Below are positions 5,150-41,476 of a stretch of DNA of 63,879 bases, piece by piece (position 1 is the stretch's first letter; each line of letters starts with the position of its first letter). Below the pieces are notes generated by a model, which did no database searches, was not told the DNA's origin, and saw only the letters and a program-made list of their open reading frames with translations. The DNA lies in the NCBI RefSeq assembly GCF_036321535.1, contig NC_087447.1:6696001-6759879 (forward strand), read 5' to 3'. A program made the translations under genes and the position numbers. The stretch comes from Camelus dromedarius (lineage: Eukaryota).

Positions 5150-5900
5150 CCTACTGGAGGTCGGGGCTGGAGGAGCGAGTAGGGCCGTGGTGGTCAGGAG
5201 AGGGGTCAAGCTCCGCTCGCTGGGATGCTCAGGCACCGCACGGCGCACCCCCGTCCCGGGTGGGGGCCCGTATAGGGCTTCGCGGCGCTCTCACCTCACA
5301 GGGACACAGTGCTTGCAGCCTCAGCCCAGGTTCCTGCTCTGACCCGGCCCCGGGCTGCCGCTCCCGCCCCACAGCCAACCGGGACTAGGGATCCTGCTCG
5401 GGTTCCAGCTCCGGGGTCTGCGACGCGGAAGCTGAGGCGGAGGAAGCGGGGCGCTCACGGCCACGCCTCCCCGGCCCGCGGGTGCCAATTGGAGCCCGGG
5501 ACTGCCGCGCACGCGCGCTGCTTGGAGCCCGCGCACTTACGACTCCATCCCCGCGGGCCCGCGCATGACCGTGACGTCCTGGCCTCACGCCTCCCGCTTC
5601 TGGCTGCCGCATTACAAAACCGTCCAGCCACCTATCCGAGTGACTGGGGACGAGTGACCCAAATACACAGGCCCCAACTGTTGGCCTGCAACGGGGTGTG
5701 GCGAGGGTTCAAGGCAATCGGGGAGAGGGGCGCGAGCTCTGGCGTTCACACGCGTGTGACTTTGGGATGGTCCCCTCACCTGTGAAAGGGAGATGCTTCT
5801 TGGGGGCGTGTCAGGGATCCACACTGGGTTGGGCGCTAGGTGAAGGTGACGTAGGCAGCCGCCTGTACTGCAGGGCCTCGAGACCGAGAGGGGTGATGGG
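5150..5900. promoter_or_regulatory. CpG island / FRMD8 promoter
   Basis: High CpG density, ETS-like CGGAAG (~5426), CCAAT (5485-5489), CRE-like TGACGTC (5572-5578). Confidence 0.85.
5295..5450 (-). other. FRMD8: FRMD8 probable non-coding exon 1 (5' end approximate)
   Basis: Strong donor GAG|GTGAGA at 5294 inside a CpG island; TSS not determinable from sequence. Confidence 0.65.
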
Positions 5901-6617
5901 CTTTACGCGGTGATCAAGAGATATGGTGCCTGTCCGGACTCATCCTAGACAAGCCCCTTCCCCTCGAGGCCTCAGTTACCATCTGCAAAATGAGGAGGTT
6001 AGACTCGATGACCTCCAAAGATCCTCAAGTTATATGTCAGAATCCAGGCTAGGCACACTTATTCCAGGGAGCAGTCACATGAGCCTTCACTATCTTAGAC
6101 ACACAGCCCTGGACACCTTGCGGCATTCCCAGGCTGGGGAGAGGCGTTGGGGCCCCAAAGAGGCAGGTGTGAAACAGCTTATCCCCAGGGTCATGTCACC
6201 AACATGTCCTGGCAAGGCTAGCCTATGTGTGCCTGAGGGGTAGGTCTCAGGGAGAAAAACAGGTCCATGGGGTGCCTTCCTGAGCTAGAGGAGCCAGAGG
6301 TTGTTTGAAGTGACAATGGGCTGGGTGATCAGGAAGGTGGGGGAGGGGCGGGGCAGTGGACTCTCCCTGCCCCGATTCCCCAGCGTTGGAAGGCAGCTCC
6401 GGCTCCTAACCCAGTCCAAGTTTTCTCAGTATTTGAAACAGCTCTTTGCTTGCCCTCCAGGACCCACACTGCCCCATAATTGGCCCATTACAACATGTCT
6501 TTCTTCCTAGCAAGACCTAGGGATTCAAGGAAGCTCAGATGCGAGCAGTGGGAACAGACATCTCCCTCCAGGTTCCCCACTCTGGGACCAGGTGGGAGGC
6601 TTGGTGTCCTCCCTAAA

Positions 6618-6752
6618 CCGGCAGCTGGCCCTGGGTCTCCAGTTCTCTCTCTCCATCTCCAAAGGGCCCCAAAGAACGTAAAGTTCCCCAAATACCCTCA
6701 GCCTGCCCCTCCAGATCTCATTGCTGCTTTTAAGTTTCCCATCAGATGCCCA
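6618..6752 (+). repeat. 135-bp unique-looking sequence, arm 1 of an inverted repeat
   Basis: Reverse complement of 7919-8053 with 7 mismatches in 135 nt and no indels (hand alignment). Confidence 0.95.
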
Positions 6753-7039
6753 CATAAAGTGTTCAGGGGTCCTTGAGAGTCACGGCCCTGCCCTCAGGAA
6801 GTTTATGTTCTGGTTTCGTTGGGCACTGGAGGGAAAGAGGAGAAAGAAACCCAGGAGAAATTCATATTTAAAGCTACATAATGTGTCAGAATTGCCTTAA
6901 GAGCTATAAAATGCCACAACAGGAAGAGCAGGGTCCTCAGTTCCTAAGCACCTACTATGTGCTACGCCCTTTCCCACGTGTTTCCCTGTGTCGTCCTCAG
7001 GGACCCTGTGAGTGGAAGTGAAAGTAACAGTAGCTGCCA

Positions 7040-7215
7040 TTTGTGGAGCATGTGCAGTGTCCAGACCCTAAGTGCTTTAGTCCTGGCAACATTACGAGGT
7101 AAGTATTATCTCTCCATTTTACGACGAGAAAACAAGATCAGAAAGGTTCAGTAACAAAACTGACATGTGGCAGTGTGTGTGGTGATGGTGAGGAGCCTGG
7201 AACCCAGGTCCAGTG
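7040..7215 (-). mobile_element. MIR within the inverted-repeat spacer
   Basis: GAGGTAAGTATTATCTCTCCATTTTAC...GAACCCAGGTC. Confidence 0.7.
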
Positions 7216-7918
7216 AGAAGGGGCACTGGGAGAGATTCCTGAAGCCATTCCAGGTCTCGGGAGCTGCAGGAGCACTGTTAGGACACGAGGGAAACCCTGG
7301 GCACTCAGAGCACAGCAGGTGGGAAGGTGGGTGGCACCCACGGCAGGGGGAGGGCGCATGAACACCAGGCGGAGAGGGGTGTGGTGGGTTTGGCAGGCAC
7401 TGAGGACATTTTGGAGGCTGTGAGCTAGAGAGTGACAAGATCAGAGCTCTACTCTGCCAGGTAGAGGGTTAACCTGGTGAAACTTGCAGGAGGATTGGAG
7501 AAGAGCTGGCTCAGGGTGGGGCTGCCCTCCTGCAAGGCTGGGAGTGGCAATGGATTTCCCTTGAACTCAGGAGGTGTGATGGGACTAGAGAGGAGCGTGG
7601 GGTCCATTCTGAAGTGACAGGGCAGACTGAAGGCCTTTAGAGCCAAGAGGCCTCAGACTCAGCACCTGCTGGGCTGGCCCCTTCTGTGAACAATAAAGGC
7701 CCACAGAAGGGCTCGCCCAGCATCACTCAGGGGGAAACGGCACTGGGACGGTAGCCCAGCCCTCTGTGAGAGACCAGGCTCTGGAAGGTCTTCAGGGCAG
7801 CTCCAGGGGGAGGGAGTCAGAGATGAACCCTGCTTCTTAGAGCCTGTCCACCCACAAGTGGGGTGAGTGTGTGCTGCTTTGGCAGCAGCGGGAGAGAAGG
7901 ATCAGCAGGACTCGTCCT

Positions 7919-8053
7919 TGGGCATCTGATGGGAAACTTAAAAGCAGCAATGAGATCTGGAGGGGCAAGCTGGGGGTATTTGGGGAACTTCATGTTCTTT
8001 GGGGCCCTTTGGAGATGGGGAAAGAGAACTGGAGACCCAGGGACAGCTGCCGG
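7919..8053 (-). repeat. 135-bp sequence, arm 2 of the inverted repeat
   Basis: Reverse complement of 6618-6752, about 95% identity. Confidence 0.95.
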
Positions 8054-8081
8054 GCGGCCCACTAATGCTGCTCCCTGACTC

Positions 8082-8790
8082 GTCCACTCATTCATTGCTT
8101 CAGTGAGTATCCATTGAGTGCCTACTCTGTGCCACATGCTATTCTAAGCCTTCAAAATAGCATCAGTGAACAAAACAGCTAGAGATCCCTGCCCAGACAG
8201 ACAACATTAATTGCACAATGTGTCAGAAGTTGATGAGTGAAAGACAAGGTTGGGCCAGGGAAGGGGAACCAGCAATGCTGGGCGGGTGGGGCAGATGGCA
8301 AAATTCAGTGAGCCAGTTAGGGTGGGCTCACTGTGTGGGTGACGTTGGAGCCCAGGCCAGAGGAGGCCACCTGCAGGCGGGAAGAAGAGAAGGAGGTCAG
8401 AGGCTACGGGGACACCTCGAGGGCACCAGAGCCTAGGAAGGCTTTGGTTGACTCTAAACAGGATGGGGCATTGCAGGGTGTGGAGTAGGGAAGAGATAGG
8501 GTCTGACTTACATTTCAACCGCATCATCTGGTTGCTGTGGAGAACAGACAGGCAGATGGCAGAGGGGCAGGGAGGCCAGTTGGGGACAGGAATCCAAGTG
8601 GAGGTGACAGTGGCTTTGGGTCAGGACAGTAGCAGTGGAGGAAATGAGGAGGGGGTGGACTCAGGATCTGTCTTGAAAGTAATAGTAACACGGGCTGGAC
8701 CTCATGGAATGGTGAGGTGAAGGGAAAGGAGGGATTAAGGTGATTCCAGGGGTTGGCGCCAAGTCTGGGGCTTTCACAGCTTTCTCTGGG
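8082..8790 (-). mobile_element. L2 fragment
   Basis: CATTCATT tail, ATTGAGTGCCTACTCTGTGCCA, GGGCATTGCAGG..TTTGACTT pattern. Confidence 0.75.
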
Positions 8791-9130
8791 CAATGGCGCC
8801 TGAGCCCTGGATCTCCATGCCCTTAAAAGAAGACCCCCTCCTTCTCAACCTCCCTCTGCCAAGCCCCCACTTCCCAGCATTCCTGAGAATAGAAATCTGA
8901 CAGTATATTTATGGCTGTTGATGTCAAGAACGGGTTACATCTGTGCCACCAGGCTCTCCTAACGCCCCCTTCCTCCTTGTTTGCAGCCCACCTTGCAGTT
9001 GGCACTTTGTCTGCAGCCACAGGTCTGCTGCCATGCTCTGCCCCACCTTCTGGTAGCATGAGTGCAGCCTAGCCTGCCTCCACGTCCCCACTGCTGCCAT
9101 CCTCCGGGCCTTACCTCAAAGGCATCCACG

Positions 9131-9686
9131 TGAGTTTAACAGAAAAAGTCAGAAATGTGGCCCTGGAGGATGTGATCCTGAACGTGGACACTGATAAAAG
9201 AAATTTTCACATATTGAGTAATGGGGAAGTCATTCTGGCTTATACATGAGTTAATTTGAATTTTATGCTAACTAGAACAGCCTATCAAACATACATTGTA
9301 CATCTGCTTTAATTATTACAAAAAAGGGTGCATTGACCAGAAGTAAAGAATCTCTATGTTGCAAATAAAGACCAAATTCCTCCCTTCCTGGGATGCCAAT
9401 GCCAGTGCCCCTTTGGTGATAAGACTCTCCTCCCAGGTTCCAAGGCCACACTGACTCACAGTGTACATGCTGATCTGTTTTTCTTTAAACTTGAAGGAAT
9501 ATATCCTTGACTTGTTTGATGTTCTTTGTTCTGACAAGATATAAAACTGTGCTGAAAATCTTGCTTCTCCAGAGCAGTTCCACAGTTATCTGAGAGGCTG
9601 TCTTCCAGGGTACAGTCTCAGTTTGGCTCAAATAAAACTTGTTTTTATCTCTATGATAGAATGTTTGTTGATTGCTTTCGTCAACA
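9131..9686 (+). mobile_element. Solo ERV LTR (probably ERV1 class; 5' boundary approximate)
   Basis: About 550-bp AT-richer island with TATAAAA (9540-9546), AATAAA (9631-9636) and a 3' terminus ...TTTCGTCAACA, matching U3-R-U5 layout. Confidence 0.75.
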
Positions 9687-11002: not shown

Positions 11003-12820
11003 GTGAGACATTTTTCTTCCTTCTGTCACATCAACCCCAATTAGGGATCACTTCCTGGAGAAGGTGGGTGACAAAGGAGAAGCTGAAGCTAAAATCCCGG
11101 TGGCCCTGGACCTCCCAGAGCCTCCTGGGAGTTGCCTGTGGGGAGGAGAGGAAGGTGCGGGTGGGTGGGTGCTACTGCCCAGAGAGGAGCCAAGGTGAGC
11201 GCCCGCCCAGGCCCACCTGCAGCGCCTGCACCGCCAGCACCACTCTCTGCAGCTCGGACAGGAATTTCACCTTTGACCTCACCTGCTGTCCTGCCTTCCC
11301 CTTTGGGCCTGTGCCCTAGCTGGCAATGGGCTGCATGCCCTGAGGCGGTTGTGCTGTGGACCCAGCTCAACTTCTGGGTGACATTTCTCTTTGGGCAAAG
11401 AGACACTCCCAACCTGCTTCCCAGGGCTGTGACCTCACCCAAAGCTTCAGGACCAGCATCTGCTGTGTAGGGCAAGACCAGGAGGTGGGCCCTCCTCCCC
11501 TGGGGCCAGTGAGACTCCCCTGAGGGCCCCCAGCTCTGCACAGCTGGCTGCAGGGCAGAGCGCTAGGAGGGCAGCGCCTGGATGGAAGCCCTGCGCAGCA
11601 ACTGTGAGCTGAAGGTAGGAAGGAGAAGAGCGGGCCGGGAGCAGGAGCACTAGGGCCACACGGTTAGATAAGTCAGCAAGATGCTCAGGTATCAGGTCCC
11701 GGGGCAGACACGGTGCGTCTGTGGTTGGCTCCTCCTCTCTGCATGTGCGTCCTCCAGGGAGGGCCAGGGCTCTCTCCACTGACTCCTTGTTCCCACACCT
11801 CCTTAGCCTCGCCTGGAGGAGCCTGCAAGGGGATCAGCTGGCATTTCTTTGGAGCCTGGCAGGAAGGCCCCCCTTCCTCCTACCTGAATCCCGCTCCCCT
11901 CTGGGCAGACTTGCTTCCTTAGCCTGGCCCAAGGAGCCTCACTCATGGTACATTTTTGTCACCACAGGAGCTCTGGGCTTGGTCCTGGGACACCCCTTTG
12001 ACACTGTAAAGGTGAGTCTAGGGGAGGCACCCAAGGAATGAAAGGCGTTGCCTGAACCAGACATCAGGGTGCCCTGAGGGCAGGGCCTGGCTGACGGAGG
12101 CTCTTCCCATGTCTCTTTCCTGGCTGGCATCCCACTCAGGGGGGCAGAGGGATGAGCTGGCTGGATGCCCAGCCTACCACCCTGCTCTGTCCTCCCTGTC
12201 CAGGTGCGGCTGCAGACCCAGACCACATACCAGGGCATTATTGATTGTATGGTCAAGACTTACCGCCATGAGTCGGTGGGTGGCCTGCTTCTTCAAGGTT
12301 TTGGGGTGGGAGCCCTCTGGGCAGTTGGTGCCAGCTTTATTCTTCCACGACAAGGCTCTGCCCTGGAAGAGAGAAAGGAGACCCGAGTCTGAGCCACTGG
12401 GGGGCTGAGTGGTAGCTTAGTGCCCCAAAGGTGGAGTTGAGGCCGTCCCCAGCCTTAGCCTGCCTCCACCTCCCTGCAGCCAGAGTGATTTCCAGCCAGC
12501 AGAAGCCCTGCCAGGACTGGAAAGGGCAAAGGTGAGGCCTCTAAATCCCCCATCCCCTTGCCTAGCATCCCCGTGTCTCTCTGCAGCTCCTGGGCTTCTT
12601 CAAGGGAATGAGCTTCCCCATCGTGAGCATAGCTGTGGTCAACTCTGTCCTGTTCGGGGTCTACAGCAATGCCCTGCTGGCCCTGACAGCAACCTCCCAC
12701 CAGGAGCGGAGGGCCCAGGCGCCCAGTTACACACACGTCTTCATAGCTGGCTGCACCGGGGGGTTCCTGCAGGTGAGGGGGCGTTGTGGGGGCACGTGCA
12801 CACAGGGGCAAGTGCGCGCG

Positions 12821-12869
<49 letters not shown>

Positions 12870-15814
12870 GTGCAGTGATGGTCAGTTCACTCCTTTCCCT
12901 CCCAGCCCCCTGTGGCGACCCACAGATGCAGACCCCAGGCCCTGCTAAGGGGAACACGGGGAGCTGTGGGGAAATGGCCTGCTCCCTGTGACCTGGCCTG
13001 GCTGAATCTGGATGGGACAGTCATGGAGAACAGAGTGGGCAAAAGGTAGGGAGACCTGGGATGGTGGGGAGACAGTGCCAAGGGGACATCATGGAGAAGC
13101 AGTTGGTGCCCCAGTCTGGGGCGACAGGGCTTGCCCACCTTTGGAGGGGTCTGCCAGCCTCCAGCTGTGGGAAGACCTCTCTCCAAGATGACCTTTCACC
13201 CTGGAGAACGGACAGTCCCCACAGAGCTCTGAGTCCAGCTCCTCCTGTCCTGCCATGGTCCTGTCCCCTCCCCCAGCCCTGCCCCGCTCAGCCCCTCTGC
13301 CTGGTGGCTGCGATCTATAAGCGTCACCCGGAGGGCCAGGGGCCCATCCACAGATACTGCTGGTAGAGGTCCAGAGTGTTAATCATTAAGTGACTCTAAT
13401 CATTGGGTTTTGGTCTTTGTTCTCAGCACTTAAGTACCAGGCTTTTGAGGAGGGGGTGGAGGAAAGAGGCCTCCAGGCAGCAGGACCAACTTCGGCTAAA
13501 TGGGAGGCCTGAGCATAGAGGCAGAGGGCGTGCACCCAGTTCCTCCCCACACCCTAGCCAGGGCCTTAGGTCACCGTCTACTCGACACCTGCCCTGATGC
13601 TCCTAACACTTCTCAGGGCTGAGAGCGAGGACACGGGAGAGGGTCAGGGGCTCACTGAGTGAATTAATGATTCACGAGACCCGAAGTCCTAGCTTTTTTC
13701 CTACCCCTTATGCGGGGTTCATGCTTGCATGTTTCCCAAGCCCTGAGACCCGCACCCCCAAAAAACAAAGAAGAGGATGAGCCCCCAGGCCAAGTGGCCT
13801 GATTTAGGCTCAGCCAGGCCCAGCTCCTCAGTCTCTCCCCTCCAGCTCTTCGGAAAGCAGAACAGATGGCAGAACTGGGATCACTCACTGATGGGGATGG
13901 GGTCCAGGGACCAACTGGAGCCCAGGTTTGCCATCACGCCCGGGTCTTGGAGTGGAAAATGTATTTGAGTGTGGAAAAGAGGAGGAAGAAGTGGGGAGTG
14001 ACCCTGGTTAGCACTGGGCAGGGAATGGCAACCTCAGATGTGCACAAAAGTTACTTTTGACTAGGCTAAGGCTGCCACGGTCAAACTGAGCAGCAATGTC
14101 TGAGGTCCCCACTGCCCTGTGGGCACAGGATGGGGAGGGGAGGGGCCCTAGCCCACCTCTGCCTGCCCCTGCCTTTGGCCCAGCCACTTCCTCACCCCCA
14201 GGAGCCCAGGGCTTAGGACCCCACCCCTGGAGAATCCCTCAGCTCAGCACTGCTCTGGAGGGTGACATTAGGGTGAAATCTCACAGGGAGGGACCCCAGC
14301 CCCCTGGCCTTCCTGCAAGGGAGGAAGTAAGCAAACTGTCACCCTCTAAATATCATCGCCAGAGCCAGCCGCAAGACTTTTCTGCCATCAGCCATCTCCA
14401 GGGCTGAGGAATTGAGCTTGTGTACCTCCCATGAAAGAACGAAACGAACAAAAAACACATAAGCCCATAAATGATACGCCAACCTCAGTTTGGACCTCAA
14501 TTCTCACCTGAACTTTCACAGCTGATCTTGACCTAGCTGCATCCCTGACCCACACTCTAGCCCCTCCCCTCAACCTCCCTCCACATCTCCCAGCACCAAT
14601 ATGACCCCAAATCCCTGTGCCCCTGGCCTCAGCCAAGTGATAAGAGTTCAGGGACCCGCAGATCCCACGCTGTCACCCACCTTCTGTTGGGACAATAGTA
14701 CTCGGGGTTTGCAAGATGTACTTCCCTACCCAGGGGCCTCTGAGAGGTGTCCTGCAGGAGGTGAGGGAGGGAGAATCTATGAAGTTGAGTCCCCAGCACA
14801 ATCGAGGTGACCTCCTTAACCCTGGGGAGGGTCAGTTCTCTGCTGTTACGTGGCACAGACTGAATCCTTTCTTCAAGGCAACGTGTCCATGTGAGTACCC
14901 TTAAGTTCAGCTGAAGGGTGGGGCGGTGCCGCTGGCTGTCAGGGGCCTGATGCTAAGGGGGGGCCCTGGCCCATTCCCACTGCGAGTGCAGGAGGCTGAG
15001 AGCTGGCAGTGGGAGCCACCAAGGTCCTGAAGGAAGACGCTGCCCTCTCTGCCCCTGCCCTCCTCCTGTCAAAATGAGAGGAAGGGACTGTTCCTGCCAA
15101 AGTCCCACCTGGGTCCTTCCTGCTTCCTTCCCTACAGGCCTACTGCTTGGCTCCTTTTGACCTCATCAAAGTCCGGCTACAAAACCAGACAGAACCCAGG
15201 GCTCAGCCAGGGAGCCCCCCGCCCCGGTACCGGGGCCCCGTGCACTGTGCAGCCTCCATCTTCCAGGCTGAGGGTCCCCGGGGTCTGTTCCGGGGAGCCT
15301 GGGCCCTGACGCTGAGGGACACCCCCACCCTGGGAATCTATTTTGTCACCTACGAATGGCTCTGTCACCAATCCACACCGGATGGCCAGAACCCCAGTAA
15401 GTGAAGTGGCGTGAGAGGGTGAAGGACCGAGAGGAGTCAGGGAGGGGAGCTGGCCTGTGTCTGGAGGGAGGGGAGGGAGACTATGGATGGGGAAGTTTGC
15501 TTTGTTCCCCAGTGTGACTCCCGCCCTGGGCTTCCTCTACCCCAGGCTCAGCCACAGTGCTGGTGGCTGGGGGTTTTGCTGGCATCACCTCCTGGGTCAC
15601 AGCCACCCCCTTAGACGTGATCAAGTCCCGGATGCAGATGGCCGGGCTGGAGCAGAGGGCGTACCGGGGGCTGCTGGACTGCATGGTAAGCAGCGTCCGG
15701 CAGGAAGGACTGGGGGTCTTCTTCCGAGGGCTCACCATCAACAGTGCCCGTGCCTTTCCGGTCAACGCTGTCACCTTCCTCAGCTATGAGTACCTCCTCC
15801 ACTCCTGGGGATGA
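10966..15814 (+). CDS. SLC25A45: Solute carrier family 25 member 45 (mitochondrial carrier), 288 aa; exons 10966-11002, 11968-12011, 12204-12275, 12587-12772, 15138-15396, 15546-15814
   Basis: Exon lengths sum to 867 nt (288 aa + TGA) and all introns are GT-AG. Three carrier signatures PX[DE]XX[KR]X[RK] are present: [24 protein letters not shown]. Matches recalled SLC25A45. Confidence 0.97.
11968..12011 (+). CDS. SLC25A45: SLC25A45 coding exon 2 (44 nt)
   Basis: [15 protein letters not shown]; CACAG| and |GTGAGT. Confidence 0.95.
12204..12275 (+). CDS. SLC25A45: SLC25A45 coding exon 3 (72 nt)
   Basis: [24 protein letters not shown]; CCAG| and |GTGGGT. Confidence 0.95.
12587..12772 (+). CDS. 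SLC25A45: SLC25A45 coding exon 4 (186 nt)
   Basis: [11 protein letters not shown]...GCTGGFLQ; GCAG| and |GTGAGG. Confidence 0.95.
12812..12868. repeat. Compound microsatellite (GC)8(AC)19
   Basis: Read directly; 57 nt of uninterrupted purine-pyrimidine alternation. Confidence 0.97.
15138..15396 (+). CDS. SLC25A45: SLC25A45 coding exon 5 (259 nt)
   Basis: [13 protein letters not shown]...DGQNP; ACAG| and |GTAAGT. Confidence 0.95.
15546..15814 (+). CDS. SLC25A45: SLC25A45 coding exon 6 (269 nt, stop TGA)
   Basis: [12 protein letters not shown]...YEYLLHSWG*; CCAG|. Confidence 0.95.
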
Positions 15815-24562: not shown

Positions 24563-25978
24563 TCACAGGCAGCAGAGCCTCTCCACCTCCTCCTCACAGG
24601 CATAGAAATTCTCAAATAACTCAGGGGAGGTGCCATTGCACTCAAACCACCTCCTCAATGTGCCCAGGGCCCGGAGGGCATCAGCTTTGCTGGGCAGAGG
24701 GTCAAAGCCATCCCCTCCGACCCTCTCCTCGTCTCCAGTGCCCATCTCTTCTTTGCACACTCCAGACACAGGCTCCTCGCCCTCCAGGTCCACAAAGCGG
24801 GAAAACTCCTCAGGGCTCAGCCCACCGGGGACTTGCGGCATCTCAGAGGCTTTGTCCCAGGCCAGCGGCGTTTTGCCAGGAGCCAGCCCTTCCTGAACGA
24901 AGCTGCTTACAATAAGCTGGAGAGGCACCTTGGCCCAGGCCGCAGCTGCTATGTGCAGAGCATCCAGCACTGTGATGCCTGCCCCGGCCTCCACCAATGA
25001 GGTGCCAGCCCTCTCGTTCTGGGCAGCAGCCAGCTTGCCCAACAGACGGTACCGGTAATGGGCCTTGAAGGCCCGGACCACGGAGCTGGGCAGGGAAGGC
25101 GTGTTGCCAGCAGCTGACAGAGGTAAGAGCCTCACGTGGCAGAGCCCGGGAAGGCCTGCCAACTCCTCCACCACTTGGGCAGCCAGCAGCAAGGCTACCT
25201 GTCGGCCCTGCCGCCCCATGTCCCGGTCAAACTGTGCCAACCACTGTGACCAGGGGATGCCCAGGTCAGGGTGGTAGGAGGCAGGCAGAGCCTCGCTGCT
25301 GACCCCAAAGAAGCACCTTGGGGCAGCCTGGCGCCCACTGACCAACACCCGCCGTTTCTCTGTGCCCTTGCTGTTGGCACACAGCAGCACCTGCACACGA
25401 TCACAGGCACCCACTCTGCCGGGCACTGCCCGATAGAGCAAGGGCACTTCTGCACAGCCAAAGATGTCCTCTGGGGAGAAATCTTTAAGGGAAAGAGGCA
25501 GCTGGGCCTGGGATGTAGGAGCTGGGGGAGGCGGCTCAGAGGGGAACGGAGGCACCAGTACATGGCGGGCGCCGAAGCCCACATTGTTTCGGCGTTTCCA
25601 GCGGACCAGCCAGCCGATGCTGGGCACAAAATCTTGACCCATGATGTCGGCCAGCTCCTTGGCTTTGTGGAGCAGCATGGGCCCCGTCACGTCCCAGGCC
25701 TTGGCCCGGGCAATGTGGTACCAGCAGAGCAGTGCCTCGTCGATCCCACTGTACTTGGACTCCCGCTTGCGTTTGCGCTCCCGGTTGGCTGTGCCGCTGC
25801 ACCAGTCCGCTAGCAACTTCTCCTTATTCTTGCAGATGCGTGAGATCTGGGGCTGGGAGACCTGGAAGCGCCGGGCCACCTCCGACTGGGACATCTTGGA
25901 CTCATCCAGGAGTTCCAGCACCTGGATCTTCTCAGCCAGGGACAGGGCATGAAGCTTCTTCTTGCTGCACAGTTCCAT
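24563..25978 (-). CDS. TIGD3: Tigger transposable element-derived protein 3, 471 aa, single coding exon (domesticated pogo/Tigger transposase)
   Basis: Intact ORF with N-terminal psq-like and CENP-B-type HTH motifs and a degenerate DDE_1 region; matches recalled human TIGD3 end to end (ends EEVERLCCL). Confidence 0.97.
   Translation of the reverse strand: MELCSKKKLHALSLAEKIQVLELLDESKMSQSEVARRFQVSQPQISRICKNKEKLLADWCSGTANRERKRKRESKYSGIDEALLCWYHIARAKAWDVTGPMLLHKAKELADIMGQDFVPSIGWLVRWKRRNNVGFGARHVLVPPFPSEPPPPAPTSQAQLPLSLKDFSPEDIFGCAEVPLLYRAVPGRVGACDRVQVLLCANSKGTEKRRVLVSGRQAAPRCFFGVSSEALPASYHPDLGIPWSQWLAQFDRDMGRQGRQVALLLAAQVVEELAGLPGLCHVRLLPLSAAGNTPSLPSSVVRAFKAHYRYRLLGKLAAAQNERAGTSLVEAGAGITVLDALHIAAAAWAKVPLQLIVSSFVQEGLAPGKTPLAWDKASEMPQVPGGLSPEEFSRFVDLEGEEPVSGVCKEEMGTGDEERVGGDGFDPLPSKADALRALGTLRRWFECNGTSPELFENFYACEEEVERLCCL

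Positions 25979-30060: not shown

Positions 30061-41476
<11,416 letters not shown>

What the first reader, a model, noticed from the sequence alone, without database searches (positions are those of the whole stretch)
6618..8053. 135-bp, 95%-identical inverted repeat bracketing 1.17 kb between the FRMD8 and SLC25A45 promoters
Seen: 6618-6752 is the reverse complement of 7919-8053, with 7 substitutions, no indels and sharp edges; the spacer is 1166 bp. I do not recognise the arm as a known TE, and neighbouring MIR/L2 relics are far more decayed. Inference: either a recent inverted duplication, or an older pair kept similar by gene conversion. Such arms can mediate flip-flop inversion of the spacer by intrachromatid recombination, or form a long dsRNA stem in transcripts crossing the region, which lies between two head-to-head promoters.
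Basis: partly seen in the sequence, partly recalled or inferred. Interest (0 to 1): 0.7.

Follow-up and report, generated by a model that had tools for sequence, protein, structure and literature searches.

The report
Camel-specific templated inverted duplication
A 135-base stretch between the camel FRMD8 and SLC25A45 genes was copied once, backwards, to a spot 1.2 kb away in the camel lineage, which is a clean fossil of a replication or repair template switch and most likely has no function.

Summary
The inverted repeat is real. The arms are 6618-6752 and 7919-8053: 135 nt, 7 substitutions, no indels, 1166-nt spacer. The own genome holds only these two copies. Independent read sets and two other Camelus assemblies also carry it.

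Orthologous loci settle the origin. Pig, cow, gray whale, horseshoe bat and zebra each have one copy, at the right-arm position, collinear with its flanks. At the left-arm position they carry about 86 nt of unrelated sequence. The left arm is therefore a derived, reverse-complement copy of the right arm, which replaced roughly 60-75 bp. The outer junction has a 5-nt microhomology (CCGGC). This matches the "1-4-3-2" template-switch type, but the copy is 130 nt long and the jump is 1.3-1.4 kb.

The seven differences are private substitutions, five on the right arm and two on the left, so gene conversion is not needed. My estimate of the age is about 24 My (range 9-44), older than the Camelus species split.

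The spacer has the ancestral orientation in all four assemblies, so there is no sign of flip-flop inversion.

A spliced plus-strand RNA puts the right arm in an intron. The left arm lies in transcribed sequence upstream of it. A pre-mRNA stem is therefore possible, but no editing or function was shown. I could not reach alpaca or llama.

The parts
6618..6752 (+). Left arm: the derived copy, a reverse complement of the right arm. About 130 nt (6623-6752) were newly synthesised.
   Evidence: In pig, cow, whale, bat and zebra it matches only in reverse, to the right-arm ortholog. Collinear alignment of all five stops at 6622 and resumes near 6777.
6618..6622 (.). CCGGC microhomology at the outer junction, present both in the ancestral target site and at the end of the source.
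   Evidence: Target in outgroups reads ...CCCTAAAC(C/T)(G/A)GC followed by TGGAC...; source reads ...GCCGC CCGGC AGCTG.
6753..6776 (.). Inner junction: about 13-24 nt that align poorly or not at all to the outgroups. The return point of the switch is not resolved.
   Evidence: Alignments. No nearby template for this stretch was found.
6753..7918 (.). Spacer of 1166 nt: old single-copy intergenic sequence in the ancestral orientation.
   Evidence: Collinear with pig, whale, cow and bat at 72-80% identity. Single copy in the own genome.
7919..8053 (+). Right arm: the ancestral source sequence.
   Evidence: Orthologs with conserved flanks on both sides sit in the collinear block: pig L008 5282-5413, whale L010 7698-7830, cow L011 4852-4966, bat L013 7663-7790, and part of it in zebra L014 8266-8314.
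6980..7098 (+). 3' part of an upstream exon inside the spacer, ending at a GAG|GTAAGT donor.
   Evidence: An RNA contig of run X16 covers 6980-7098 and then continues with sequence found at 8987. The donor is also present in whale, cow and bat.
7099..8986 (+). Intron (GT...AG) of that plus-strand transcript. It contains the right arm.
   Evidence: The junction is in RNA only, not in the DNA runs. A polypyrimidine tract plus CAG precedes 8987. X16 gives no RNA cover over 7111-8322. Transcriptomic runs hold a share of 0.10 or less of 7150-8320.
8987..9130 (+). Next exon of the same transcript. Its end is inferred from a GTGAGT donor at 9131.
   Evidence: The exon end is read from the sequence, not shown by reads.
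5200..6000 (.). CpG island, the presumed FRMD8 promoter, 0.6-1.4 kb left of the left arm.
   Evidence: GC 0.60-0.73 and CpG observed/expected 0.63-0.91. The FRMD8 coding range ends about 200 nt to its left in the annotated Camelus loci.

Best explanation
This is the footprint of one mutational event on the camel lineage. A growing DNA 3' end ending in ...AAACCGGC (window 6622) left its template and annealed through the 5-nt microhomology CCGGC/GCCGG to the opposite strand 1.4 kb away (8049-8053). It copied about 130 nt of it (8048 down to 7919), then returned about 60-75 nt downstream of where it had left. The result is a reverse-complement copy (left arm) of an old intergenic sequence (right arm) that replaces a short stretch of ancestral DNA. 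In the four-point template-switch model this is type 1-4-3-2. It could equally be a microhomology-primed templated insertion during break repair (the MMBIR/FoSTeS family); the two cannot be told apart from sequence. The two arms then drifted apart by ordinary substitutions. The repeat is fixed in Camelus, sits in non-coding DNA between FRMD8 and SLC25A45, and most likely has no selected function. Shown here: derived versus ancestral arm, the empty site, the outer microhomology, and private substitutions on both arms. Inferred: the molecular pathway and neutrality.
For: There are two copies only in the genome, and both are confirmed in independent read sets and in the C. ferus and C. bactrianus assemblies. 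Pig, whale, cow, bat and zebra each have one copy, at the right-arm position, with conserved flanks. At the left-arm position they have about 86 nt of unrelated sequence, and every collinear alignment breaks at exactly 6622. CCGGC is shared by target and source. The copy is contiguous with no indel. There is no target-site duplication around the left arm or the whole unit. Polarised by outgroups, 5 of the 7 differences are changes on the right arm and 2 on the left, while 6 substitutions and a 1-nt insertion are shared by both arms. This is as expected for a copy made partway along the camel branch and then left alone. The source is no more conserved than its surroundings: 0.78 against 0.75, with 21% of windows as high. 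The event type and its consequences are described in PMC5453318.
Against: The copied fragment (130 nt) and the jump (1.3-1.4 kb) are far larger than the 'few tens of base pairs' events for which the four-point model was validated. The inner junction shows no clear microhomology and has about 13 nt that I cannot align or template. All 7 differences lie in the outer 87 nt (chance about 0.046), so a small gene-conversion patch over the inner 49 nt is not excluded. Neutrality is assumed, not tested. The left arm lies in transcribed sequence.
Confidence: 0.8

Rival explanations
1. The pair is an old inverted repeat present since before the camel lineage and kept 95% alike by gene conversion between the arms (concerted evolution).
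For: All 7 differences lie in the outer 87 nt and the inner 48-49 nt are identical. Another locus in the same genome was reported by this scan as a conversion-maintained palindrome (not checked by me).
Against: Five outgroups from four orders have a single copy and an unrelated sequence at the left-arm site. Both arms carry private substitutions.
Confidence: 0.02
2. The arms are terminal inverted repeats of a DNA transposon, or two insertions of one repeat family in opposite orientation.
For: The edges are sharp and the 1.4-kb unit has inverted ends.
Against: The genome holds only two copies and the spacer is unique. The spacer and right arm are ancestral and collinear in the outgroups, so the 'element' did not arrive as a unit. 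There is no target-site duplication around the left arm or the unit. A 9-nt direct repeat around the right arm is chance, because that arm is the ancestral one.
Confidence: 0.02
3. The repeat has been co-opted. In plus-strand transcripts that start near the FRMD8 CpG island, the arms pair into a 135-bp RNA stem that loops out the 5' splice site at 7098. This changes splicing, editing or stability of upstream SLC25A45-direction RNAs.
For: A spliced plus-strand RNA (7098 to 8987) has the right arm in its intron, and RNA contigs cover 6221-6571, 6647-6877 and 6980-7098. A random-primed library holds 0.70 of the intron stretch. The arms pair over their full length in the minimum-energy fold of 6598-8073.
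Against: RNA depth is 2-5 in one run, the strand of the unspliced contigs is unknown, and DNA carry-over is not excluded. No A-to-G change lies in the arms. The three differences seen (6524, 6818, 8673) lie outside the arms and may be alleles. Both arms evolve at about the neutral local rate. The raw-read RNA run gave no reads at all.
Confidence: 0.07
4. The arms drive recurrent flip-flop inversion of the 1.17-kb spacer by intrachromatid recombination.
For: Inverted orientation and 95% identity make it formally possible. Short-read graph contigs cannot fix the spacer orientation, because they break in the shared 49-mer.
Against: The window, C. ferus and C. bactrianus assemblies all have the same orientation, which is the ancestral one seen in pig, cow, whale and bat. 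The longest uninterrupted identity is 49 nt. From general knowledge, this is well below the roughly 200 nt needed for efficient homologous recombination in mammalian cells.
Confidence: 0.03
5. The second arm is an assembly artefact.
For: None was found.
Against: Independent runs of two organism labels give both arm-specific variants joined to their own flanks, and double depth on the shared 49-mer. Two other assemblies carry the same structure.
Confidence: 0.01

Closest known systems
Template-switch mutations, four-point model type 1-4-3-2 (Loytynoja and Goldman 2017, PMC5453318)
   Same: The novel sequence is a reverse-complement copy of nearby DNA. It replaces the ancestral stretch between the leave and return points, creates an inverted repeat in one step, and has the switch points in the order 1 < 4 < 3 < 2 along the reference.
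   Different: The catalogued events involve a few tens of bases within one replication fork. Here the copied fragment is about 130 nt and the template lies 1.3-1.4 kb away. The authors state that their model was not meant for long-range switches.
Microhomology-mediated break-induced replication / fork stalling and template switching (MMBIR/FoSTeS), and templated inverted insertions at double-strand breaks (for example PMC11724301, listed; abstract only read)
   Same: There is microhomology (5 nt) at a junction, an inverted templated copy, and loss of some original sequence at the site.
   Different: Those mechanisms are usually invoked for kb-to-Mb rearrangements, or for very short (5-34 bp) foldback insertions in yeast. 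This event lies between the two scales. Only one of its two junctions shows clear microhomology.
De novo RNA hairpins and miRNA precursors made by template switching (PMC10710096, PMC8794818; seen, abstracts only)
   Same: One mutation creates a perfect stem in a transcribed region.
   Different: The stem here is 135 bp with a 1166-nt loop, nothing like a miRNA hairpin. Rfam finds no RNA family in it.
Inverted Alu pairs in primate transcripts (ADAR substrates, circular-RNA promoters; from general knowledge)
   Same: It is a long near-perfect intramolecular duplex between an arm in transcribed upstream sequence and an arm in the following intron.
   Different: The arms are a unique two-copy sequence, not a repeat family. 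No editing or back-splicing was observed.

Membership tests
Template-switch mutation, type 1-4-3-2 | The derived sequence is a contiguous reverse-complement copy of nearby sequence in the same region. | tested here: met
   135 nt, 95% identity, no indel. With outgroups, the 7 differences resolve into later substitutions.
Template-switch mutation, type 1-4-3-2 | The ancestral state lacks the copy and has other sequence between the leave point and the return point. | tested here: met
   Pig, cow, whale, bat and zebra have about 86 nt of unrelated sequence where the camel has 154 nt.
Template-switch mutation, type 1-4-3-2 | Order of the switch points is 1 < 4 < 3 < 2, so an inverted repeat is made without inverting the spacer. 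| tested here: met
   Point 1 = 6622, point 4 about 60-75 nt further in the ancestor, point 3 = 7919, point 2 = 8048-8053. The spacer is collinear with the outgroups.
Template-switch mutation, type 1-4-3-2 | Short range (tens of bases, within one fork). | tested here: not met
MMBIR/FoSTeS-type templated insertion | Microhomology at the breakpoint junctions. | tested here: inconclusive
   The outer junction has CCGGC, 5 nt. The inner junction has at most 2 nt (CA) and about 13 nt of unexplained sequence.
DNA transposon with terminal inverted repeats | Target-site duplication and further copies in the genome. | tested here: not met
   No direct repeat of 6 nt or more abuts the unit; only scattered 6-mers occur within 60 nt of its ends. 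No further copies exist.
Inverted repeat homogenised by gene conversion | Both arms present in outgroup lineages, with arms grouping by species. | tested here: not met
   There is a single copy in five outgroups. Alpaca and llama could not be examined.
Recombination-driven invertible segment | Both spacer orientations exist among individuals or species. | tested here: not met
   One orientation, the ancestral one, is seen in the window, C. ferus and C. bactrianus. Short-read contigs are uninformative, and population long reads were not available.
ADAR-edited inverted-repeat RNA duplex | Both arms lie in one transcript, with clustered A-to-G differences between RNA and DNA in the arms. | tested here: inconclusive
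   The right arm is intronic and the left arm is covered by an RNA contig. No A-to-G change lies in the arms, but depth is 2-5 and contigs drop rare variants.

The most novel reading that the evidence does not exclude
The camel-specific copy created a 135-bp stem in pre-mRNAs that start near the FRMD8 CpG island and run towards SLC25A45. The stem encloses the 5' splice site of a MIR-like upstream exon (donor at 7098). It might therefore act as a lineage-specific RNA switch, through splice-site masking, ADAR editing or back-splicing, on a mitochondrial carrier gene.
Probability: 0.06. Interest if true: 0.5.

Novelty: new member of a known kind. Interest (0 to 1): 0.27.

Why it matters
This is a well-resolved natural example of a mid-sized templated inverted insertion. 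The source, the empty target site, a 5-nt junction microhomology and the later substitutions are all visible. It falls in the poorly documented gap between short template-switch mutations (tens of bases) and kilobase-scale MMBIR/FoSTeS rearrangements. It shows how a long perfect RNA or DNA stem can appear in one step near promoters. It could also serve as a rare genomic change marking camels, and perhaps all camelids. Beyond that it is an ordinary neutral structural mutation. Nothing here points to a new kind of system.

Tried and rejected
1. A 9-nt direct repeat (GACTCGTCC at 7909 and 8077) around the right arm looked like a target-site duplication. I rejected it because the outgroups show the right arm is the ancestral copy.

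2. Rfam over the whole window found no family in the region.

3. The dog locus (L012) was uninformative. Window 6881-8866 has no counterpart there.

4. I could not reach alpaca or llama.
- The cluster listings show only 15 of 116 members, none a lamine.
- Ranking by a camel query surfaced no lamine representative.
- Exact look-up of ten ORFs near the repeat found nothing. Five of these began with GTG or TTG, so that part of the test was not valid.
- A homolog search with the 158-aa ORF in the CpG island was blank.
- Two metagenome scans, with a flank pattern and an arm pattern, were blank.

5. The dromedary protein P0267 is not on record for contig look-up.

6. The raw-read RNA run X23 laid no reads, so it gave no test of strand or editing.

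7. I searched for a nearby template for the unaligned bases at the inner junction and found only chance 8-mers.

8. I tested whether the source arm is an unusually conserved element. It is not.

9. Runs labelled organism D hold about 0.2 of the words, as a relative about 5% diverged would.

Full report
**Observation.**
The repeat is exactly as described. The arms are 6618-6752 and 7919-8053: 135 nt, 95% complementary, 1166 nt apart. Aligning the arms with 50 nt of flank shows 7 substitutions (6 transitions, 1 transversion) and no indel. Similarity ends abruptly on both sides. All seven differences lie in the outer 87 nt, and the inner 48-49 nt are identical. The chance of that under a uniform rate is about 0.046. 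This is the only inverted repeat of 60 nt or more within 10 kb in the 64-kb window.

**Not a repeat family, not an artefact.**
A search of the window's own 2.3-Gb assembly with the arm finds only the two arms. The spacer finds only itself. Logan contigs of two independent DNA runs were laid on 6000-9000. One is organism A from a study not flagged as the source; the other is organism B. They gave, with zero mismatches:
- a contig ending at 6733 that carries the left-arm variants;
- a 49-nt unitig (6704-6752) at about twice the local depth;
- a 1226-nt contig covering 6723-7948;
- a contig starting at 7938 that carries the right-arm variants.

That is what two true copies sharing a 49-nt perfect core give in a k=31 graph. 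The same graph cannot fix the orientation of the spacer.

**Where it lies.**
- The 471-aa ORF at 24563-25978 (minus) has the CENP-B_N, HTH_Tnp_Tc5 and DDE_1 domains.
- Its exact sequence is encoded in a dromedary assembly next to a DPF-type gene and a Mito_carr gene.
- Annotated loci of C. ferus and C. bactrianus (L006, L007) show FRMD8 (minus) and SLC25A45 (plus) head to head around the repeat.
- A CpG island at 5200-6000 lies 0.6-1.4 kb left of the left arm.
- SLC25A45 coding exons are readable from about 10960 onwards.

**How I reached orthologs.**
I searched a 62-aa SLC25A45 exon (12587-12772) against the representative library. A full-length representative then seeded a homolog search. 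Cluster listings gave named orthologs. Exact-protein look-ups returned each gene with 10 kb of upstream DNA:
- C. ferus and C. bactrianus;
- pig;
- gray whale;
- cow;
- dog;
- greater horseshoe bat;
- plains zebra.

**Within Camelus.**
L006 and L007 align to window 6000-9200 end to end at 99.7% identity, with the same spacer orientation. The left arm is identical to the window's, and the arms again differ at seven positions. The structure therefore predates the divergence of these camels. Three assemblies agree on one orientation.

**Outgroups settle polarity.**
In pig, whale, cow, bat and zebra, the collinear alignment with the window runs up to exactly 6622 and resumes near 6777-6870. It continues through the spacer and through the right arm. 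In zebra only the outer 49 nt of the right arm survive a local deletion. The left arm finds a match only in reverse, and that match is the ortholog of the right arm. The right arm aligns to these orthologs together with both of its flanks. At the left-arm position the outgroups share about 86 nt of unrelated sequence, where the camel has 154 nt. Dog lacks the counterpart of 6881-8866 and is uninformative. Hence the right arm is ancestral, at least as old as the common ancestor of bats, horses and artiodactyls. The left arm is a derived reverse-complement copy that replaced roughly 60-75 nt.

**Junctions and mechanism.**
At the outer junction the ancestral target reads ...CCCTAAAC-CGGC followed by TGGAC. 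The CpG has decayed to TG or CA in several outgroups. The source reads ...GCCGC-CCGGC-AGCTG. Five bases (CCGGC, 6618-6622) are therefore common to target and source.

A nascent 3' end ...AAACCGGC could anneal to GCCGG at 8049-8053 on the other strand and copy down to 7919. The inner junction (6752/6753) shows at most a 2-nt overlap. It is followed by about 13 nt that I can neither align to the outgroups nor find a template for nearby.

In the four-point description of template switching, the points fall in the order 1 (6622), 4 (about 60-75 nt on), 3 (7919), 2 (8048-8053). This is type 1-4-3-2, which creates an inverted repeat without inverting the spacer. That type made up 31% of the high-confidence human-chimpanzee events (PMC5453318). 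The scale differs: those events involve a few tens of bases, and the authors exclude long-range switches from their model.

Sequence alone cannot tell a replicative switch from microhomology-primed synthesis during break repair. I treat both as one class. No target-site duplication flanks the left arm or the unit, and there is no poly(A), so transposition and retroposition are rejected.

**Age, and whether conversion is needed.**
With four or five outgroups, the seven arm differences polarise as follows:
- five changes on the right arm (positions 11, 32, 61, 63 and 86 of the arm, one at a CpG);
- two changes on the left arm (positions 35 and 81).

Six substitutions and a 1-nt insertion are shared by both arms and absent from all outgroups. 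These are changes on the camel branch before the copy was made.

I modelled the counts as Poisson with one rate: 6 before the copy on one lineage, 7 after it on two lineages. I took about 64 My for the camel branch, a figure from general knowledge. This gives an age near 0.37 of the branch, about 24 My, with a binomial 95% range of roughly 9-44 My. This is my own calculation.

Private changes on both arms, at about the local neutral rate, mean gene conversion is not required. A small conversion patch over the identical inner 49 nt cannot be excluded. The source arm is not a special conserved element. Its mean identity to four outgroups is 0.78 against 0.75 for the region, and 21% of 135-nt windows score as high.

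**Inversion.**
The spacer is collinear with pig, cow, whale and bat in the window and in both other Camelus assemblies. The only orientation seen is therefore the ancestral one. With 49 nt as the longest perfect tract, efficient homologous exchange is not expected in mammalian cells (general knowledge). Population long reads were not available.

**RNA.**
In a transcriptomic run (X16), contigs cover 6221-6571, 6647-6877 (most of the left arm and its inner junction) and 6980-7098. The last contig then continues with sequence that lies at 8987, with one mismatch. The skipped stretch, 7099-8986, starts with GTAAGT and ends with a pyrimidine tract plus CAG. This is a plus-strand intron, and it contains the right arm.

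The joined form is absent from the DNA runs. X16 has no cover over 7111-8322. Transcriptomic libraries hold 0.10 or less of 7150-8320. One random-primed library holds 0.70, which could be pre-mRNA or DNA. The donor at 7098 also exists in whale, cow and bat. From memory it sits in a MIR-like relic, which I did not test.

Folding 6598-8073 as RNA pairs the arms over their whole length. In the plus-strand RNA, three of the seven differences become G-U pairs. A pre-mRNA stem enclosing the 7098 splice site is thus plausible.

The evidence is weak, though. Depth is 2-5 and the strand of the unspliced contigs is unknown. The three RNA-DNA differences (6524, 6818, 8673) lie outside the arms and may be alleles. 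The raw-read run gave nothing.

**Verdict.**
It is a single, camel-lineage, microhomology-associated templated inverted insertion, copied from the right arm. It is older than the Camelus radiation and probably 10-40 My old. The gene-conversion alternative is refuted. Inversion is unsupported. The dsRNA idea is possible but unshown.

It is a new member of a known kind of mutation, of unusual size, and most likely neutral. The main gap is the missing alpaca/llama locus.

I did not check it, and it concerns different DNA.

Noticed in passing
window 6980-7098, 7099-8986, 8987-9130: A plus-strand spliced RNA uses a GAG|GTAAGT donor at 7098 and an acceptor at 8987. It looks like an upstream non-coding exon pair of SLC25A45-direction transcripts. 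The donor lies in a MIR-like relic (my recollection, untested) and is also present in whale, cow and bat but not in pig.
   Followed up: partly
window 30505-30584 (minus): A tRNA-Ala (AGC) call by ARAGORN and Rfam (38.3 bits). It could be a real tRNA gene or a tRNA-derived SINE head.
   Followed up: no
L012 (dog) 7765-8089 against window 6881-8866; L014 (zebra) 8235-8266 against window 7334-8005: Independent deletions in other lineages. Dog lacks the whole spacer and right-arm region, and zebra lacks 670 nt including most of the right-arm ortholog. This argues that the region is dispensable.
   Followed up: partly
window 7909-7917 and 8077-8085: A 9-nt direct repeat, GACTCGTCC, flanks the right arm. 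It looked like a target-site duplication but is chance, because that arm is ancestral.
   Followed up: yes
window 24563-25978 (minus): An intact 471-aa TIGD3-type domesticated transposase ORF (CENP-B_N, HTH_Tnp_Tc5, DDE_1). An identical protein is encoded in a dromedary assembly.
   Followed up: partly
window about 12800-12870: A CA-type microsatellite lies just downstream of the SLC25A45 exon that ends at 12772. It is seen as a THTHTH run in the open frame.
   Followed up: no
   Followed up: no
runs X19 and X25 (organism D): These runs hold about 0.2 of the sampled words of both query stretches, as a relative about 5% diverged would (possibly a New World camelid).
   Followed up: no
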